NCBI RefSeq assembly: GCF_022045235.1
Contig: NW_027266330.1
Coordinates: 24,614,001-24,678,000 of the forward strand
DNA from: Haliotis cracherodii
Lineage: Eukaryota
Reading direction: 5' to 3'
Length of the DNA: 64,000 nucleotides
The position numbers were made by a program, and so were the translations under genes. This document shows, piece by piece, positions 6,181 through 14,469 of this stretch. Positions within the stretch are counted from its first letter, which is position 1; the number at the start of each line of letters is the position of its first letter. The notes under the pieces are model-generated. The model did no database searches, had not been told where the DNA came from, and was given only the letters and a program-made list of their open reading frames with translations.

Positions 6181-6826
6181 GCCGGCCCGACTTTTAGCCC
6201 CCCCCCCCCCCCCCCGCGTTATTCGCCTCTTACGACGAGCGTTGTGAGACAAAGTAGATTTAAAGTTTTTGTTGCAACAGCCCATGACACAACCGCAGGG
6301 GATGCCAGGCACGAGAATTAGACCATGTAGACATTTGAACCCGAGTTTTGAGCTTTGAGCGAAAACTATAATCCCTATCAAAGCTTCGAATACAAAATAA
6401 TTATGATAGCTGGCGTTTTTCAATTGCATGAAGGGTCATTAAGTGTTCACTGTAAATTTGATTGTTCAAATAACAATGTTTCATTTACATTTACACGGTC
6501 TTTGCAATTAATTACTGGATTAACATCCACACAATATGATAATCTCGAATTCGAAAGGCACACGTGTGAGGCACTCGTGTACGTTGCGTAGCGATAAAAC
6601 AACGTTTCTGATCCCATCGTTCATGGACGTATTGTGGGTTTGTAACCTCAAAACGCAACAGCTTGAATGTGATCGCGAACGCCTTCGCCTTGTAATAAAC
6701 ATGTGTTACCTTGTCAGATCCCTCAAAACGAACTCTATGTGTGTAGTAGAGGACGATAGTGTTCATGTGCTGATGTACCGACCGTCTTCTGCGTTTTGGT
6801 AATATGCACGTATGCATTGTTGGTAT

Positions 6827-6900
6827 CACGGACCTATATAACCTGGATAGGAAACGCAACAGATAGCCTCAGGTCATCTACGCCGCGCTACCGGCGATTG
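6827..6900 (+). repeat. Left terminal inverted repeat of the P element
   Basis: Inverted match to 14072-14145. Confidence 0.9.
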
Positions 6901-7883
6901 TTTTTCCACCTCTGCGGGGGGTCATCGCCAAGGCTCATGGGTAGATTCACTGACCAGCTCTTCAATTTTTGTCCGCTTATCGCTTCAAAAAATCCGAATT
7001 TCCCGTGTATTTCGCTTATATACAGACTTGAAAGGTAAGTGGATATTTTGTTTATATATTGTGTAATGGTATTCGGGACGAAATAAGACTTCTGAAAGTA
7101 ATTATTTTTGTTTCAACTGTCTTTAGATATGTGCACACCGGTCCATTGTTTTCGTCTTGCATCCAAGATGGCAGACAAGTGAAATCGTGATATTTGGCTG
7201 TTTTATTTCGCTATCTCCTTCGTTATCATCCAATAAAGTCCTTAGTTACAAGGGTGTGCTGAACATATGCTATCTGTACAGCAGTTATGTGTAAGAACAT
7301 CTTTGATAATGTTATTTCACAACGAATTACGAGTCCATGAAAATCGATGTTTATGCAAGAAAACTCGGAAATTTTTACACACACGCACAATTTGGGCGTG
7401 CTAAAACTTTTATTCTGATAGATATTTTTTCCCCCAAAAAAACCCAACTAATACCTTATATACCAATAAGCAACTATGCGGTTTTGTAATTACGAAACAT
7501 TTGTTAAATACTCTGTAATTAATGTTACAAAAATAGCTATAATTTAGCTTAAAATATAAGGAAATCTACTATAAATTCCCACTTGAAACATACATTTCAT
7601 GTCAAATAATGTTTCACATGGGTAGGTGTTGGAGAAAAATAATGATTCATAGCATATTCTATTTTCAGCCCATATTTCATGTTCCTAATTTCTGAAGTGT
7701 AATTCACTAACTTGTAAAATAATTATATCCAAGACTTTTTCTGCAGTAATATGATCTGTATGTTTTTATATTATAATTATAGGTTTCAACTGTCAATAAA
7801 TAATGCTACATGTCCACATGAGTACATTCTTGTTGATTTAACATGAAGAATGATAAAACAGGTGCATTATGTTCCATTTACAG

Positions 7884-10800
7884 ATGCCACGCCGAAAGAA
7901 AATGCCAGGTATTGGCCAGAAAAAGAAGCACTATAAAAGAAAATCTTCAAAGGTGACAACTTCATTGGACAGAGACCACAGCCATGCTCAAGTGAACCAT
8001 CATAGAACAGATGATCAAGTAATTGTGGAAAGGTTTGTTATTTTCTAGGTATATTACATGCCTTTTGCAAAGTATAGAAAATATATCAAGTTGATTTAAG
8101 GACATTTTATTGATTGTTGTTAAATTTAATCATTTACATTAGTTGTAAAGTATGTGAGGTGAAATGGAGTTACATGCCACATTCCAGGGTATTGCACTTG
8201 TATGGCAATGTTTTTATGTGGCTGCTTGTAATAGCCTAGAGTAAAGCCAATTGATATAATTTTTTGTCACATTTAAATAATTTGTATTAATTTTATGTGC
8301 CAATCCAATTGAGATGATATATTATTCTAAATATCTTGTTCCAGTTCACAAGATGAGTTTGGTGCTAAATGGAGTGAAGCCTGGGATGCCTTCTACCTTG
8401 GACATGGATCAGGCACTCGCAACAACACTTCCACTGAAGAACCAGAAGAAGTTGATTCAGACTGCAGTTCTGCTAATAGGTTCTATGTCATTTTACATAA
8501 AGTTTTCTGCTATAAATCACATGTGGACTTAGACAAGTTTGTCGAGAAACTATGGAGGGATAGAAGGTTTGAGTTATTTCAATTTTTGAAGAATGACATC
8601 AAGAGCCATACTGATGCATTGTCCGACTTCACAATTTCAAGGATAACTGATGATAACATCCAGCTTGTCCAACATTATCATGGAGAGTCTCCAACAGTCA
8701 AATTGTGTATGAACATAAGATCATCATTAGTTCCCTCTCTGCTTGTACACAAGATTGTGATTGACAGAGAACATGATATATGGACGGGTCTTCCCAAAAT
8801 TGTGATGTCATTTGGAGACCTTCAGAAGTTCTTTGATAGACTCAAACTTTGGGATGTTTGTGTTGGAAATCATGAGGAAGAGTTCACCAGTACAATGCCA
8901 AAATGGAGTACTTCCTACACAAAGACGAACCAAGTTCTTGCATACCATGAAGCCGATTTCTGTGCGAAGCGAGATGATATTGAGTACCACTCTACCATTC
9001 GATCAACCAAGTGTTCCATGTTGACTGTTAGAAAAAGGTGTAGCCATTGCAGTTTGTATAGAAACACACTTCGAAAGAAAGTTTCACGTTCAAAACAGCA
9101 AGAATCATCATTTTCTGAGAAGAAAACCACACCCCATAAACACATGTCCAAGGACATGATGATATCTAAGATTAAGGTGATGAAAGATAAAACACAGCAC
9201 CTGCAAACTGAACTTGACAAGATTCGACGCAGCATATGGAAGAGCATATCTGTGGAAGGACAGAAACTTAATGAAACTGACAATGTTGAACTTTTGGGAT
9301 TGCTGAAGAAACATACAGTTGATGTTGAAAAGGCCTTCCCCGATGAGAACTCGCTACAGAGGCTTTTCTGGGATCAGCAGTTGAAATGTGTAAGTTTGAC
9401 AGACAGAAGGCAAATGAAATGGCACCCAATGATCATTAAGTGGTGCCTTTATATTCGAAGCAAAAGCCAAAAAGCATACGATGCCACCAGAGATGCTGGA
9501 TTTATCTCCCTACCAAGCAGTCGAACACTGTTTGACTATTCACACTGGTTACCTGCTGAATGTGGCTTTAACTATGCCTCTGTGTCACATCTCAGGAATG
9601 AAGCAGCCCAGCTGGGAATGTTTCAGGAAGAATGGATGAGTTATGTTGGAATTCTTCAAGATGAGGTGAAAGTGTCTGAGGGGTTAGTTTACGACAGAGT
9701 AACTGGTGAGCTTGTTGGGTATGTTGAACTTGAGAAAACTGGCAATGACTTGTTGCATATGGAGAATTTAATTGCGAACACTAAGAAGAAACTAGCATCT
9801 TCCATTCTTGTCATAATGGTTAGAGGGATTACTTCTTCCCTGAAGTACCCAGTTGCCTGTTTTGCCACAAGTGGGATAACTGCTGATCTTTTGTATCCTG
9901 CTATATGGAAGGCTGTCCGATTTTTGGAAATTGAATGTAGATTAAAAATTCTGTTTGTAACATGTGACGGTGCATCTCCTAATAGAAAATTCTTCAATCT
10001 GCATCACTGTGAGGAACTTCAAAACACATACTGGACCTGGAACCCCTACTCATATCCTAGACGGAAGCTTTACTTCATTTCAGATGTCCCTCACCTCCTC
10101 AAAACCACCCGAAATTGTTTTGCCAATTCTGGAAGCCACAGCAAGTCACGTGACATGTGGAAAGATGGACAGGACATCAGGTGGTCACACATTGTTAGGT
10201 TGTATGAAGAATATGTGGAACCATCAATTTATGCTCATGCTCACAAATTAACGCGGGAGCATATTGATCTCACGCCTTTTGCTAAAATGAAGGTGAATCT
10301 GGCAGCTCAGGTATTGAGCAAAACTGTTGCGGATGCACTTGAACATTTGTATGATGATTCTGTGAGTGAGACTGTGAATTTTATCAGACAGATGAACAAA
10401 TTTTTTGATTGTTTAAATACAAGGAACTTGAATGAGGCAGACAGGAAAAGAAATACTAATTTACGAGAATATGTCGATCGAAATGATGAGAGACTGACAT
10501 ATCTGACAACTGAATTTCTTGGTTATTTCGATGCATGGGAAAGAGCTGTTTTGAACAGACAAGGGCCTCTCACGAAGAGTCAGAGATCTAGAATGATGTT
10601 GAGCAAGCAGACACTACATGGATTACGCATCACGGTTCAATCTATTGTGGAATGTGTTAGGTTCCTACTAGATGAGGGTGCAAACTTTGTACTAACTCAC
10701 AGATTCAACCAGGATCCACTTGAAGAACATTTCTCTCATTATAGACAAAAGGGAGGGGCCAACAGCAATCCTACTGTGTATGATGTGAAACATACCATGT

Positions 10801-10925
10801 CACAACTTCGTGTCATTGGTTCAACTGCCTTAGCACCAATTACAGGCAACATTACAAACAAGAGAGGACATAATGACATTCGAGTGGTTCACACCCCACT
10901 AACTAAGAGACAGAGGAGAAACTGA
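7884..10925 (+). CDS. P-element/THAP9-family DDE transposase, about 909 aa, lacking the THAP domain and C-terminal domain
   Basis: Exons 7884-8032 (MPRRKK..., phase-2 GT donor) and 8345-10925 (ccag acceptor, in frame with the 800-aa ORF); probable non-coding exon ending at 7034 (AAG|GTAAGT). Motifs: LPSSRTL, ILQDEVKV (D1), VTCDGA (D2), SDVPHLLK (DxxH), KMKVNLAAQ and FFDCLN (insertion domain), NQDPLEEHFS (E), GGANSNPT. Confidence 0.92.
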
Positions 10926-10958
10926 ACATTGACATTTGTGGTGTTTATTTAGTGATGA

Positions 10959-11127
10959 GGGGCGGTCGGGTAGCCTTGTGGTTCAAGCGTTCGCTCGTCA
11001 CACCAAAGACCGGGTTTGATTCCCGACATAGGTACATTGAGTGTACCCCATTTCTGGTGTCCCCCACTGTGATATTGCTGGATTATTGCTAAAAGCGGCG
11101 AAAAACCATAGTCACTCACTCACTCAC
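10959..11127 (+). mobile_element. tRNA-derived SINE (family A) inside the P element
   Basis: ggggcggtcgggtagcc...gtcac...(cact)n with A/B-box-like motifs; tatttagtga duplicated at 10946-10955 and 11128-11137. Confidence 0.85.
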
Positions 11128-11139
11128 TATTTAGTGAAG

Positions 11140-11370
11140 CCTGTGAAGATCCAGACTAGAAACTAGAATTGATCTTAAGCAAACCATGCTTCTTGTTAGT
11201 GGCGACTGCAGACCAGCTGTTCAGACTTGGGAACTTTATTAATGCATGTCATAAAATTTATGCTCATGATGTCTATCACTGGATTGTCTAATGCTGACTT
11301 GATTGTTTTTTTACTACCGTCATTTAGCCAAAATATTGCTGAGCACGGCTTTAAACAACAAACGAACAAA
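11140..11370 (+). mobile_element. Diverged family B retroposon inside the P element
   Basis: cctgtgaagatcc...ccatgctt...ggcgact...cactggattgtct...aaacaacaaac, matching the family B pattern. Confidence 0.65.
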
Positions 11371-11603
11371 TCTTGTGTTTTGAGACTAACAAAATAAAAA
11401 GTCAAAATAAGATCATTTGTATGTATTTTCTTCAAGATTATTTCTTGCAGTTTGAAAAAAGCACCCACAAAATAATGAGATAAAATGTACAGCTAATTAA
11501 GCACTAAAATATGTACAGTTATGTTATTCACTGATATTAGAACAATTTTTATATTACATGTACGAACAAATCAACTGGCACAAAATCCAAACATATTAAG
11601 CAG

Positions 11604-13748
11604 TTAATGTTCCCTCAGGCGTTTTCTAAGGGAATTTGACTTTTTCCCTTTTTTTGCACGTTTGGGTGTGCTGGCATTTCTTTTTTGTGTTTGCCTGCGA
11701 ATGTGCTGGACAACAGCTCTTCCTCGCAGTTTCAGGAACAAGTCCGCAATACTTTCCAAAATGGAGAGCTTTTCTTCTTCACTACTTGTGACGAGCTTGT
11801 CCCAGTAAAACAGGACTGTTGTATCTTTAAGAATGCTGTCCTTAAGGCGGTCAACACACAGGGAATTTGCATTTAAGTTTGATGTGTCGACTTGATGCCG
11901 ACAAATTATCTCCATTTTTCTCACAAGAAAGAAAAAATTGTCCCCACTAACTTTAAGTCCTCCTCTGTTGACAGTCTCAGTCCAAACGCGAAATTTTGTC
12001 ATAAATGCAGATGAAGTATCCTGTGATGTTATGCATAAATGCCTCAGGGTTTTGGCTACTTTTGACTCTATTCCTGAGTGCTTTGTAATGGCCCTAATTA
12101 AAAATCCACAGATATAAAATAGAGTCTCATTTTCCGCCGAGGTCAGATCTTTAGCTTCGTGTTCTGCATCACTCTGTATACTTGATATAAACTTCGTACA
12201 CACAGCATCTACCAGTTCATCCAACAAGCACTGACTTAACATGTGGACATTCCAGTCACTCTCTTGTGTGTGTAATTTTATTACATCATGCAATTGATCA
12301 CAGAACTTGGTGTCAGTTCTTACTCTGTGGAACTGTGCCCACATCTGCTCTCTGCTCGCCACAAAGGAGCTGCTTTTTCCCAATCCAGAAAACAATGTTA
12401 CAAATGTAGGTGTCAGGTGGTCAGTTATTTGAGCTAGGCATGACTCTGAACCAGAAAGTAAACTAGCAATGTCACACATTTTCCCCTCACATGCCAGATC
12501 CGACTTGTGAATTTCATTATGAGCTATTGCGTTTAAAGAATTGCGGACAGACTCCAGCATACATCCTTGCAATTGCTCAGTGCTGAAGAAAACTTGATTT
12601 GAGGAACTTGTCAGCGTAGGAGGTGTGGTCGGTATGGTCTGCTGTGTCTCACTGGTAAGCTTGTAGTCAGGAGCTGGAATTAGTAATAATATCCCTTATG
12701 ATATGCAATCAAAAGAACCTTTCACCAAGTATATTAGTTTAAGGTTGAATGTATGGTGTTAACATGTAAATGTAAACATGTATCAAGGCATTTATCCAGT
12801 ATGTTTACGAAGTGCCTGTGGCAGTCAAATTGTGGAAGATAACCGTTATTCTGTTCAAAATAAGGATTTCCATATTTTTTTAATTCATAGTTATTTTACA
12901 ATTGTATTTTGAGATTGAATTGAATCCAATGATATAAAACTAAGCATTAACACATCACGATGAATAAATAAAAAGTAATTGAAAAAGCATACTAACTCAG
13001 GCTTCTTAAATGATTAGATTTTTATCTGATACAAGTATTCTGTTCATATGTAATGATTGCAACATTGAAAGTGTATACACATGATACAAGAGTCCCAAAA
13101 TGTTAGTTCAATTATTATTCTACGGCAGTCAAATTAATGTATCCATGGTCAATGTGTTAAGATTAGATTAAATGTATACAAATTAAGATAGATACACACA
13201 TGATAAAATACAAATAGGGTTACTTATTTCTGAAATTATATTAGTCTGGAGGACAAAATTGCAATATGTAAATTGAAGAATCTATGTATTCCACACATTA
13301 TAACATCTTGGAGTATCTGCTTTCCTCTTATAATTATATGCCTATATTTTACCATTATTCATATATATACCCATGGTGGTAATTAGCCAAATTGTGCCCT
13401 GGGGCTTTTATGTAAGAATATATATGTAAATAAAATATGAATATATGTTTGAACAGAAAACTTTACTGTTTTGTGATTTTCATTACCTCGTAAATCGGAT
13501 CTTCCGTGTGCTTTGATCACATGGCCACGGAATCCAGAAATTGAACCGTAGTCTTTGCTGCACAAAGGACATCTGTACAAAGCTGCAAAAGTCTTGCCAG
13601 GTCTCCTGTTTTCGCCAGTCTTTTGCACCTTTGAATGGCAGTCATCGGACGTTGAATCCGAGTTTCTATCCACTTCATACTCTGTGTACTCGCCTAGAAG
13701 TACGGACAAATCCATATCGGAGTCATCCCAGTTGACGAAATCGGACAT
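11604..13748 (-). CDS. P-element second gene, about 443 aa: C2H2 zinc finger plus P-transposase C-terminal-domain-like region
   Basis: Exon 1 13748-13487 (acaacATG; YRCPLCSKDYGSISGFRGHVIKAH; phase-1 donor G|GTAATG). Exon 2 12673-11604 (ttccag acceptor, in frame with the 322-aa ORF). Contains ETLFYICGFLIR, WTETVNRGGLKVSGDNF, ILESIADLFLKLRGR and a basic NLS-like tail. Confidence 0.85.
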
Positions 13749-14071
13749 GTTGTAGTTGTTACGAGAGAATCTGAACGCTTGAATATGTATCCGTATTAGG
13801 TTAGGAATGACGATAATGTTGCAAGGCATTGTATATATATGGTCTGATATCTCGATCATCTTAATTACCGTTTCCGTGTTTAATTGATAAAAATCTGATG
13901 CACATGGGACATATGTGTTTTGACAGCTATCGATCGCCACACATGCTTGTAAGCCGGATGTTTTGGTAACCAGGGGAAGTCAAGTTAAGCCCTACTACGC
14001 ATGCGCCATAAGCTGTCCACATGTGGTTGGCATCGCGTCTGCGGGATACCGATAACATGGGGCTCGGATTT

Positions 14072-14145
14072 CAATTCGCGGATGCGCGGCAGAGATAGTT
14101 TCAGGAATTCTGTATCGTTTCCTATCCAGGTTATACAAGTCCGTG
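14072..14145 (-). repeat. Right terminal inverted repeat of the P element
   Basis: Inverted match to 6827-6900; ends in ccgtg. Confidence 0.9.
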
Positions 14146-14469
14146 TTGGTATTAAAAAAAAACCGCGCTGCATTAAATATTGCACAACATCGCGACATAC
14201 ACTCTGTTAACTTTCTGTTGTGTATATTCTCAGTTATAGCCCTTCGCATGCAGCAGTATATTATCCGCCCCGCCACGAGCAAATATACTACCTGGCCCAG
14301 ATTGTTTCGCTGAAAATCTAGGTCGGTTCATCAGTGTTATTGTTATTGTTGATCTACTTACCCCCCGCGTGTGCTTGTCGTTGCGTTCGAGCGAATTGCT
14401 CAGCGATCGCGAACACTAAAGGACCGCTATTGATTCCGAAGTCGCGGTTGCTCTCTAGATGACCCCGTG

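What the first reader, a model, noticed from the sequence alone, without database searches (positions are those of the whole stretch)
6827..14145. Two-gene P element with an apparently split transposase: catalytic core and C-terminal domain on separate convergent genes
Seen: one TIR/TSD-bounded element holds two intact, spliced, tail-to-tail genes. Gene 1 (7884-10925) has all P/THAP9 catalytic motifs but ends about 65 aa after the catalytic E (NQDPLE) and has no THAP finger. Gene 2 (13748-11604, minus) has ETLFYICGFLIR...WTETVNRGGLKVSGDNFFFLVRKME...ILESIADLFLKLR. Known (recalled, not searched): canonical P/THAP9 transposases end in a C-terminal domain with the signature EYIAGYV..K...GGL..PS..F...E...F..IR on the same chain. 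Inference: that domain has been split off into a second gene and fused to a C2H2 finger, so transposition may need a heteromeric complex. This would parallel Harbinger (transposase + Myb) and the convergent RAG1L/RAG2L genes of ProtoRAG. I cannot check whether this architecture has already been catalogued.
Basis: partly seen in the sequence, partly recalled or inferred. Interest (0 to 1): 0.93.

Follow-up and report, generated by a model that had tools for sequence, protein, structure and literature searches.

The report
Two-gene P transposon, split transposase
This abalone jumping gene of the P-element family keeps its DNA-cutting core and the transposase's usual C-terminal domain in two separate, facing genes, an arrangement shared by a large group of marine-invertebrate P-like elements that I could not find described.

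Summary

**The element.** Window 6827-14145 (Haliotis cracherodii) is a young, multi-copy P-superfamily DNA transposon. It has 74-nt imperfect TIRs and 7-bp target duplications.

**Gene 1 (+).** It has the P RNase H core with the GTP-binding insertion. It ends 66 aa after the catalytic E, as does every homologue examined in which the E motif was found.

**Gene 2 (-).** It encodes a C2H2 finger, a helical domain, then a domain that matches the Drosophila P transposase C-terminal domain (CTD).
- The family profile's best PDB hit is 6p5a_B (E 7e-4).
- PF12596 is the Pfam family most often matched by family members.
- The AlphaFold model (pLDDT 93) superposes on all 118 CTD residues: Z 12.5, rmsd 2.3 Å, next hit Z 7.2.

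**Expression and linkage.**
- Both introns are spliced in transcriptome-like contigs.
- Gene 1 mRNA runs through its stop codon with no downstream exon.
- The tail-to-tail pair recurs in at least six further Haliotis lineages and on one metagenome contig. A seventh, distant lineage has the pair head to head.
- Identities of the two genes co-vary across lineages.

**Not shown.** That the two proteins form an obligate heteromer is inference. Whether the split or the fusion came first is open.

The parts
6820..6826 (.). Left target-site duplication, TTGGTAT
   Evidence: The same 7 bases lie at 14146-14152.
6827..6900 (+). Left terminal inverted repeat, starting CACGGAC
   Evidence: The repeat pair I1. 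The boundary is confirmed by copies L025 and L019.
7884..8032 (+). Gene 1 exon 1: a basic N-terminus of 49 codons plus 2 nt
   Evidence: tblastn of NCBI model P0003. The spliced joint 8030>8343 (cut +2) is seen in four runs.
8033..8344 (+). Gene 1 intron, 312 nt, GT..AG
8345..10925 (+). Gene 1 exon 2: P-type transposase core without THAP and without the CTD. It ends 66 aa after the catalytic E.
   Evidence: The open frame is intact in 4 copies. PDB 6p5a_A matches at E 4e-14. A 2783-nt spliced contig runs through the stop codon to 10982.
9558..10001 (+). TNP-like RNase H N-terminal domain. It holds the predicted catalytic D380 (9660-9662) and D482 (9966-9968), in ORF numbering from 8523.
   Evidence: PF21787, E 1.3e-21. 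D482 is placed by the alignment to DmTNP; D380 lies outside that aligned stretch and is placed from the recalled P-type first-D (DE) motif, so it is inferred.
10092..10445 (+). GTP-binding insertion domain
   Evidence: PF21788, E 7e-24.
10698..10778 (+). RNase H C-terminal segment, with catalytic E734 (10722-10724) in the NQDPLE motif
   Evidence: PF21789, E 5e-7. It aligns to DmTNP E531.
10956..11128 (+). Nested tRNA-derived SINE-like repeat between the two genes, ending in (TCAC)n. A second small repeat lies at 11256-11370.
   Evidence: Many copies at 82-88% identity in unrelated loci. Contig depth is extreme here. Sequence.
11604..12673 (-). Gene 2 exon 2, including the stop codon
   Evidence: tblastn of P0001. 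Spliced joint 12673>13487. Intact in 5 copies.
11607..11678 (-). Basic C-terminal tail with the conserved KKSxSLRKxL motif
   Evidence: Alignments A1 and A2: R316 invariant and L319 near-invariant in the 102-sequence alignment A2, K310 to L319 conserved in the 4-sequence A1. It parallels the basic C-terminal end of the DmTNP CTD.
11679..12152 (-). Domain homologous to the P transposase C-terminal domain (ORF residues 141-298). Near-invariant residues are Y153, G156, W197, R203, G204, G205, L206, E221, R283 and G284.
   Evidence: Profile hit to 6p5a_B, E 7.2e-4. VIA-align Z 12.5, rmsd 2.3 Å, 118/118 residues, DmTNP 617-734. Foldseek probability 0.99, TM 0.70.
12153..12572 (-). Family-specific helical domain (ORF residues 1-140; conserved MW..FH..R and QCLLD motifs). 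No counterpart was identified in DmTNP.
   Evidence: Alignments. Model. Best structural hits are only Z 6-7.
12674..13486 (-). Gene 2 intron, 813 nt, GT..AG on the minus strand
13487..13859 (-). Gene 2 exon 1 (NCBI start at 13859). The C2H2 finger lies at 13506-13571.
   Evidence: Pfam zf-C2H2_4 matches at E 1.4e-3, below the cut-off. The finger signature is conserved in 18 of 21 relatives whose models include the N-terminal extension.
14072..14145 (-). Right terminal inverted repeat
   Evidence: The boundary is confirmed by L027, L006 and L019; the flank of L026 also diverges after 14145 although its blastn match runs to 14155.
14146..14152 (.). Right target-site duplication, TTGGTAT

Best explanation
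The stretch is an autonomous P-superfamily cut-and-paste transposon whose transposase is divided between two convergently transcribed genes.

Gene 1 supplies the catalytic RNase H domain with its GTP-binding insertion and an N-terminal Cys-rich region. It lacks both the THAP finger and the C-terminal domain.

Gene 2 supplies a C2H2 zinc finger, a family-specific helical domain, a true homologue of the P transposase C-terminal domain (CTD), and a basic tail.

Shown here:
- the anatomy of the element and its recent mobility;
- splicing of both genes;
- homology of gene 2 to the CTD;
- long-term linkage and co-divergence of the two genes over a large clade.

Inferred:
- The gene 2 protein docks its CTD in trans where the tethered CTD sits in the Drosophila transpososome. 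That site lies between the RNase H domain of one subunit and the GTP-binding domain of the other, in contact with transposon and target DNA.
- Its C2H2 finger may take over the end-recognition role of THAP.
- Productive transposition would then need both proteins, with supply of the CTD acting as an on-switch.

My odds: P transposon with two real genes 0.97; gene 2 domain homologous to the P CTD 0.9; both proteins required for transposition about 0.6.
For: Mobility:
- TIRs plus 7-bp duplications in two independent copies.
- At least 5 copies at 98-100% identity, and a deletion derivative with intact ends.

Gene 1:
- Pfam PF21787, PF21788 and PF21789 all match. PDB 6p5a_A matches at E 4e-14.
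- Gene 1 is widespread in molluscs, a hemichordate, a crinoid and Hydra.
- In 69 of the 120 homologues checked the E motif was found, and in all of them the tail after it is 43-85 aa. None of the 120 carries PF12596.
- PF12596 has no match anywhere in this genome.

Expression:
- Both introns are spliced.
- A 2783-nt contig carries spliced gene 1 through its stop codon.
- Indels in other organisms' copies keep the frame.
- In a partial sample, 17 of 37 coding substitutions are synonymous.

Gene 2 homology to the CTD:
- The profile's best PDB hit is 6p5a_B, E 7.2e-4, with two collinear motifs.
- PF12596 is the most frequent Pfam match among members.
- Five members carry a precomputed THAP9_C label.
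- The AF2 model has pLDDT 93.2 and pTM 0.86.
- 6p5a_B scores Z 12.5, rmsd 2.3 Å, 118/118 residues. It is the only Z>=8 hit of 48,161 chains. Foldseek probability 0.99, TM 0.70.

Linkage:
- Tail-to-tail pairs occur at 12 or more loci in lineages only 52%/36% identical.
- Partner genes of P-like transposases only 24-28% identical are homologous to gene 2 (hhalign probability 96%, E 2.5e-9).
- The same order is seen on metagenome contig L037.
- Gene 1 and gene 2 pairwise identities correlate (Spearman 0.82).

Plausibility of action in trans (review PMC7776569):
- In DmTNP the CTD hangs on a flexible, disordered linker and docks on the other subunit's GTP-binding domain.
- The natural 66-kDa P protein, made when the third intron is retained so that the last reading frame (ORF3) is left out, lacks the C-terminal third. 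It is inactive and acts as a repressor.
Against: - No interaction or activity data exist for these proteins, and no co-fold could be run.
- The window protein itself has no Pfam hit to PF12596 or PF22824 even at E<=10.
- Family members reach at most 20.8 bits against a cut-off of 22.6.
- The precomputed THAP9_C labels were not reproduced by live hmmscan.
- The tool's own note warns that Z up to about 13 can arise between unrelated helical bundles.
- The sequence E-values are modest, around 1e-3.
- Gene 1 keeps its own conserved Cys-rich N-terminal module, so gene 2 may not be needed for end recognition.
Confidence: 0.7

Rival explanations
1. Gene 2 is a true CTD homologue but acts as a dispensable regulator or targeting factor, for example a repressor, chromatin tether or nuclear-import aid. 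In this clade the gene 1 protein would be catalytically self-sufficient without any CTD.
For: - Gene 1 retains all catalytic and GTP-binding domains and its own Cys-rich N-terminal module.
- Partner genes carry different reader-type fingers in different clades: C2H2 here, PHD in L028 and L029. That fits a targeting role.
- Truncated P proteins are known to act as repressors.
Against: - In Drosophila, only the full-length protein that includes the C-terminal part catalyses transposition.
- The CTD contacts both transposon and target DNA in the transpososome.
- The CTD-like domain, not the finger, is the invariant part of the partner across clades.
- The linkage has persisted through deep divergence.
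Confidence: 0.2
2. The direction of evolution is the reverse of 'split off'. The two-gene state would be ancestral for the P superfamily, and Drosophila P and THAP9 arose by fusing the partner's CTD onto the transposase. This rivals only the evolutionary wording, not the mechanism.
For: - The two-gene state spans very deep P-like divergence, with 24-28% identical transposases.
- The stand-alone family is very large: 3143 representatives at E<=1e-3.
- In DmTNP the CTD is joined by a disordered linker, as expected after a fusion.
Against:
- The partner has extra domains (finger, helical domain) that are absent from DmTNP. A fusion scenario would need them to have been lost.
Confidence: 0.4
3. 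Gene 2 is an unrelated captured host gene, and its likeness to the P CTD is chance convergence between helical bundles.
For: - Sequence E-values are only about 1e-3.
- The window protein alone hits nothing.
- Helical folds give middling Z scores easily (note).
Against: - The single top hit in two independent kinds of search is the one domain that the adjacent transposase lacks.
- All 118 target residues align at 2.3 Å, and the next hit scores Z 7.2.
- The motifs are collinear.
- The partner is conserved beside P-like transposases in every lineage examined.
Confidence: 0.04

Closest known systems
Drosophila P element transposase (DmTNP; PDB 6P5A and 6PE2) and vertebrate THAP9
   Same: - RNase H catalytic core with a GTP-binding insertion domain.
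- TIRs and a 7-8 bp target duplication.
- An all-helical CTD of the same fold, with the same motifs and a basic end.
   Different: - Here the CTD is on a separate polypeptide, encoded on the opposite strand.
- There is no THAP domain.
- The CTD is preceded by a C2H2 finger and a helical domain that DmTNP does not have.
- Gene 1 ends 66 aa after the catalytic E, against about 220 aa in DmTNP.
Drosophila P 66-kDa repressor versus 87-kDa transposase (regulated splicing of the third intron)
   Same: In both cases, whether the part carrying the CTD is present is what separates two protein states. In Drosophila that part is encoded by ORF3, the last reading frame, which is joined on by splicing of the third intron. 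In both, the CTD module is a separately controlled unit.
   Different: Drosophila controls it by alternative splicing of one transcript. Here it would be controlled by a second promoter and gene. The regulatory role is inferred here, not shown.
PIF/Harbinger (transposase plus Myb-like protein) and ProtoRAG (convergent RAG1L and RAG2L)
   Same: These are eukaryotic DNA transposons with two genes inside the TIRs. ProtoRAG also has the convergent orientation. A second protein works with the catalytic subunit.
   Different: - The protein families are unrelated.
- In those systems the partner is not a piece that is part of the transposase chain in sister lineages.
- They are functional analogies only, recalled from general knowledge and not tested here.

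Membership tests
P superfamily of DNA transposons | RNase H-like DDE transposase of the P/THAP9 type with a GTP-binding insertion domain | tested here: met
   PF21787 E 1.3e-21, PF21788 E 7e-24, PF21789 E 5e-7. DmTNP 6p5a_A E 4e-14, with D and E aligned.
P superfamily of DNA transposons | Terminal inverted repeats and a 7-8 bp target-site duplication | tested here: met
   74-nt TIRs. 7-bp duplications in the window copy and in L019.
P superfamily of DNA transposons | [quoted passage not shown] | tested here: not met
   There is no PF05485 hit in the 800-aa ORF of gene 1 that was scanned, which covers nearly all of exon 2. Exon 1 (49 codons) was read by eye only and is merely basic. A few distant homologues do carry THAP.
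P superfamily of DNA transposons | C-terminal domain on the same chain as the catalytic core | tested here: not met
   Gene 1 ends 66 aa after the catalytic E. Its mRNA contig runs through the stop codon. The CTD homologue is in gene 2.
P superfamily of DNA transposons | GTP-dependent transposition | not testable with these tools
   Only the presence of the domain is shown.
Tnp_P_element_C (PF12596) and THAP9_C (PF22824) domain, for gene 2 | Score above the Pfam gathering threshold | tested here: not met
   - The window protein has no hit at E<=10.
- The best relative scores 20.8 bits against a cut-off of 22.6.
- 13 of 102 relatives match at E<=1.
- The PF22824 labels are precomputed only and were not reproduced.
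Tnp_P_element_C (PF12596) and THAP9_C (PF22824) domain, for gene 2 | Profile-level sequence similarity to a bona fide P CTD, with conserved motifs in the same order | tested here: met
   The A2 profile matches 6p5a_B at E 7.2e-4. It is the top hit of 177,635 sequences, through two collinear motif blocks.
Tnp_P_element_C (PF12596) and THAP9_C (PF22824) domain, for gene 2 | Same three-dimensional fold as the solved CTD | tested here: met
   Z 12.5, rmsd 2.3 Å, 118/118 residues (DmTNP 617-734). It is the only Z>=8 hit of 48,161 chains. TM 0.70, probability 0.99.
C2H2 zinc finger (gene 2 exon 1) | CxxC-12-HxxxH pattern and a Pfam match | tested here: inconclusive
   The pattern is present and conserved in 18 of 21 relatives with the N-terminal extension. 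Pfam zf-C2H2_4 gives E 1.4e-3, 19.6 bits, below the 27-bit cut-off.
PIF/Harbinger or ProtoRAG two-gene transposons | Harbinger-type DDE transposase with a Myb-like partner, or RAG1-like with RAG2-like proteins | tested here: not met
   The Pfam scans of both genes show only P-type domains and a C2H2 finger. The resemblance is in architecture only.

The most novel reading that the evidence does not exclude
A large, ancient clade of P-superfamily transposons in marine invertebrates uses an obligate two-subunit transposase.
- A catalytic, GTP-binding subunit.
- A separately transcribed subunit that brings the CTD together with a zinc-finger DNA or chromatin reader.

Delivery of the CTD in trans would be the activity switch. 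That would be the gene-level counterpart of the splicing switch of the Drosophila P element. The single-chain Drosophila P and THAP9 proteins may be the fused derivative of this state.
Probability: 0.5. Interest if true: 0.82.

Novelty: new variant of a known kind. Interest (0 to 1): 0.74.

Why it matters
P element transposase is a textbook enzyme, and THAP9 is its human relative of unknown role. Both are described as single multi-domain chains.

A widespread natural version with the CTD on a separate protein would matter in several ways.
- It would be a natural dissection experiment for what the CTD does, such as DNA looping, target contacts and assembly.
- It would show that the module Drosophila regulates by splicing can be regulated as a gene.
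- It would add the P superfamily to the short list of eukaryotic DNA transposons with multi-subunit transposases.
- It gives thousands of currently 'uncharacterized' invertebrate proteins an annotation as P-transposon CTD partners.
- The near-identical intact copies make this element a candidate for an activity assay and for a two-component genetic tool.

Tried and rejected
Searches that led nowhere:
- Direct Pfam and PDB sequence searches with the window's gene 2 protein gave nothing relevant. The signal appears only with a family profile.
- The first structure prediction used a 4-sequence alignment and was too poor to use (pLDDT 63.7). I replaced it with the 102-sequence model.
- The word-index homologue search found only 2 relatives of gene 2. 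The exhaustive HMMER search found thousands.
- An HMM of the 4-sequence alignment A1 against 120 gene 1 homologues found no fused CTD.
- PF12596 and PF22824 searches of the whole genome found no canonical CTD.
- The ESM Atlas search was uninformative: scores <=0.86 and unrelated families.
Both genome-contig scans were empty.
- Five literature searches found no description of a two-gene P element. Repbase and Dfam could not be consulted.

Right-hand ends of some copies and cross-species neighbourhoods could therefore not be fetched.

Readings considered and rejected:
- A captured host gene.
- A gene 1 exon downstream of its stop codon. No such joint exists. The only odd joint, 9634>11050, has 21-nt sides, no GT..AG ends, and lands in the SINE.
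- L030 and L031 as solo gene 2 genes. They are truncated copies of another lineage.

Exons were searched by reference, and the NCBI models P0001 and P0003 were used as the search returned them.
Full report
**1. Origin and boundaries**

The window is from Haliotis cracherodii. NCBI's 480-aa 'uncharacterized protein' P0001 is 100% identical to the gene 2 ORF. The window maps to G000:C67:24614001-24678000.

Inverted repeats lie at 6827-6900 and 14072-14145 (74 nt, 74%). The first 30 nt match 28/30, and the termini read CACGGAC...GTCCGTG.

The flanks carry TTGGTAT on both sides. BLASTN against other genomic copies shows similarity stopping at or within a few bases of 6827 and 14145 in L025, L027, L006 and L019; the match to L026 runs to 14155, although its flank also diverges after 14145.

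L019 is an internally deleted derivative, made of 6827-6886 joined to 10926-11841 and 13873-14145. It has its own 7-bp duplication, CTTTCTC.

So this is a bona fide, recently mobile element with a 7-bp target duplication. At least five copies are 98-100% identical, four of them with both reading frames intact.

**2. The two genes are real, intact and expressed**

The exon maps come from tblastn of the NCBI models, and the splice sites were read from the sequence.
- Gene 1: 7884-8032 and 8345-10925.
- Gene 2 (minus strand): 13859-13487 and 12673-11604.
- Both introns are GT..AG.

I laid contigs of four transcriptome-sized public runs on 7800-13799.
- The gene 1 intron is skipped (8030>8343, GT..AG) in all four runs, which carry four different organism codes.
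- The gene 2 intron is skipped (12673>13487, CT..AC, i.e. GT..AG on the minus strand) in two runs.
- One 2783-nt contig holds spliced gene 1 from 7882 and runs straight through the stop codon (10923-10925) to 10982. Three further contigs also cross the stop codon unspliced.

There is therefore no downstream exon that could add a CTD to gene 1. Gene 2 lies on the other strand, so cis-splicing is impossible anyway.

The copies in the other organisms differ by about 1.4%, and their indels preserve the frame:
- 9 nt lost at 7940;
- 21 nt gained after 12614;
- a +1/-1 pair three bases apart at 12294 and 12297.

In the subset of substitutions the tool listed, 9 of 20 in gene 1 and 8 of 17 in gene 2 are synonymous. 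About a quarter would be expected without selection. This is a partial sample and only suggestive.

The runs are contigs and are labelled RNA only by guess. The spliced joints are the evidence that they are RNA.

**3. Gene 1 is a P transposase without THAP and without a CTD**

- Pfam gives TNP-like RNaseH_N (E 1.3e-21), the GTP-binding insertion domain (7e-24) and RNaseH_C (5e-7). There is no THAP hit.
- The Drosophila enzyme 6p5a_A matches at 4e-14, with the second D and the E aligned.
- The predicted catalytic residues are D380, D482 and E734 of the ORF that starts at 8523. D380 lies outside the stretch aligned to the Drosophila enzyme and is placed from the recalled P-type motif, so it is inferred.
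- The protein stops 66 aa after the E.

This short tail is not decay. Of 120 homologues checked, 69 had the E motif by my pattern. All 69 have tails of 43-85 aa, nearly all 57-77, ending in a basic stretch. None of the 120 carries PF12596. The homologues come from Mytilus, Pecten, Crassostrea, Patella, Littorina, Dreissena, the hemichordate Ptychodera, the crinoid Antedon, Hydra and many unnamed assemblies.

PF12596 and PF22824 (THAP9_C) have no significant match anywhere in the abalone genome.

**4. Gene 2 carries the missing domain**

On its own, the 322-aa exon 2 ORF hits nothing in Pfam or the PDB.

An exhaustive HMMER search with a four-sequence family profile found a very large family:
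- 3143 representatives at E<=1e-3, and 1317 at <=1e-10;
- the best 150 are all stand-alone proteins of 166-493 aa.

The members that carry names are 'uncharacterized' proteins of Haliotis rufescens, H. rubra, Patella, Pecten and Ptychodera. These taxa also hold gene 1 relatives.

A 102-sequence alignment (A2) has near-invariant Y153, G156, W197, R203-G204-G205-L206, E221, L272, R283-G284, R316 and L319.

Sequence evidence from that alignment:
- Its best match in the PDB is 6p5a_B (E 7.2e-4). This 135-residue chain is the Drosophila P transposase CTD.
- The match runs through two collinear blocks, the YIAGYVI block and the GGL.KPS..F block.
- Scanned one by one, 13 of the 102 members match PF12596 at E<=1 (best 8.7e-4). 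That is more than for any other family. Further members reach 6e-4, or 20.8 bits against a cut-off of 22.6.
- Five members carry a precomputed THAP9_C label. I could not reproduce that label with the live scan, so I count it as soft evidence.

Structural evidence:
- With A2 as input, AlphaFold2 gave a confident all-helical model: pLDDT 93.2, pTM 0.86.
- Foldseek's only sensible PDB match is 6p5a_B (probability 0.99, TM 0.70 over the target). All other rows have rmsd of about 20-35 Å.
- VIA-align places model residues 141-298 on DmTNP 617-734: Z 12.5, rmsd 2.3 Å, 118 of 118 residues.
- A Foldseek-independent sweep of 48,161 representative chains gives the same single hit above Z 8. The next hit is Z 7.2, on the other domain of the model.

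The tool warns that helical bundles can reach Z of about 13 by chance. Here the match covers the whole target domain, stands 5 units clear of the next hit, agrees with the sequence motifs, and is the one domain the neighbouring transposase lacks. I take the homology as established at about 0.9.

The basic tail after the domain, with its conserved KKSxSLRKxL motif, parallels the basic end of the Drosophila CTD, which points at target DNA.

Upstream parts of gene 2:
- Residues 1-140 of the exon 2 ORF form a family-specific helical domain. It has only weak structural neighbours (Z 6-7).
- Exon 1 carries a C2H2 finger. Its signature (CPxCxK...SxxGFRGHxxKxH) recurs in 18 of the 21 relatives whose models include the N-terminal extension, from Haliotis to Pecten and Ptychodera. 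Pfam support is below the cut-off.

**5. The pairing is old and conserved**

- In the abalone genome, gene 1 and gene 2 relatives lie tail to tail at 12 or more loci.
- These include four further lineages in which the transposase is 52-63% and the partner 31-44% identical to the window's.
- Two much more distant P-like transposases, L028 and L029, are 24-28% identical and also have short tails. Each has an adjacent opposite-strand gene of 578 and 625 aa ending in a PHD finger. In L028 the two genes are tail to tail; in L029 they are head to head.
- Those two partners are homologous to each other (E 6e-22) and to the gene 2 family (hhalign probability 96.2%, E 2.5e-9, 234 columns).
- Across the seven lineages, the pairwise identities of the two genes co-vary: Spearman 0.82 over 21 pairs, which are not independent. 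The closest pairs are the same for both genes, as expected if the genes diverged together.
- Outside Haliotis, metagenome contig L037 (4.3 kb) has a gene 2 relative on the plus strand, with fragments of a gene 1 relative converging on it from the minus strand.

**6. How it most likely works**

From the review PMC7776569, the Drosophila enzyme behaves as follows.
- The CTD is joined to the RNase H domain by a flexible, disordered linker.
- The CTD contacts transposon and target DNA.
- The 66-kDa protein arises when the third intron is retained. It lacks the C-terminal part, cannot catalyse transposition, and acts as a repressor.

A domain that already docks in trans on a floppy tether can plausibly be supplied as a separate polypeptide. 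I therefore propose that the gene 1 protein forms the catalytic, GTP-binding core. The gene 2 protein would complete the transpososome with the CTD and contribute a zinc finger, possibly in place of THAP. Supply of gene 2 would gate activity. The docking, the requirement for both proteins and the regulatory role are all inferred.

**7. Rivals**

- Gene 2 is a dispensable regulator or targeting factor (0.2).
- The resemblance to the CTD is chance (0.04).
- On evolutionary direction only: the two-gene state is ancestral and Drosophila P and THAP9 are fusions (0.4). This is unresolved because no rooted tree could be built.

**8. Comparison and novelty**

The element meets the defining catalytic and terminal features of the P superfamily. 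It fails two features typical of the described members: THAP, and a CTD on the same chain. It resembles Harbinger and ProtoRAG only in having two genes.

Five full-text searches found no description of such a P element. Repbase and Dfam could not be consulted, so prior cataloguing of a 'second ORF' cannot be excluded.

I rate it a new variant of a known kind, interest 0.74.

Exons were searched by reference, and the NCBI models P0001 and P0003 were used as the search returned them.

Noticed in passing
window 10956-11128 and 11256-11370: Two very abundant small repeats sit in the 680-bp spacer between the two stop codons. The first is a tRNA-derived SINE-like unit with box A/B-like sequence, ending in (TCAC)n. 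It reaches enormous summed contig depth and has copies at 82-88% identity in many unrelated loci. Transcript contigs of both genes end at these repeats.
   Followed up: partly
L028 5853-8159(+) with 9982-8246(-); L029 6493-8658(+) with 5773-3896(-): Two distant P-like transposases (24-28% identical, also short-tailed) each have an adjacent opposite-strand partner of 578 and 625 aa. The partner is homologous to gene 2 but ends in a PHD finger instead of starting with a C2H2 finger. In L029 the pair is head to head rather than tail to tail.
   Followed up: partly
L019 (G000:C1:41496774-41500010), about 1239-2480: A non-autonomous, internally deleted derivative of the element. It keeps 60 nt of the left end, the spacer with the 3' end of gene 2, and 273 nt of the right end. 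It has its own 7-bp duplication, CTTTCTC.
   Followed up: yes
window 7940, 12294-12297, 12614: Copies expressed in other organism codes (probably other abalone species or populations) differ by frame-preserving indels: -9 nt, a +1/-1 pair, and +21 nt. They also differ by about 1.4% in substitutions.
   Followed up: partly
window 9039-9053 (gene 1 ORF residues 173-177 and surroundings): A conserved Cys-rich motif lies in the THAP-less N-terminal region of gene 1. It is a single Cys, about 9 residues, then CxxC followed by YR..LR, and it is present in all the mollusc and hemichordate homologues I read. It may be an alternative zinc module. The same point was noted by another first-stage finding.
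   Followed up: partly
window 9634 > 11050: An odd joint appears in two runs. It skips 1415 nt, has no GT..AG ends, has only 21 nt on one side, and lands in the SINE. It is probably a chimeric or repeat-driven contig rather than an intron.
   Followed up: no
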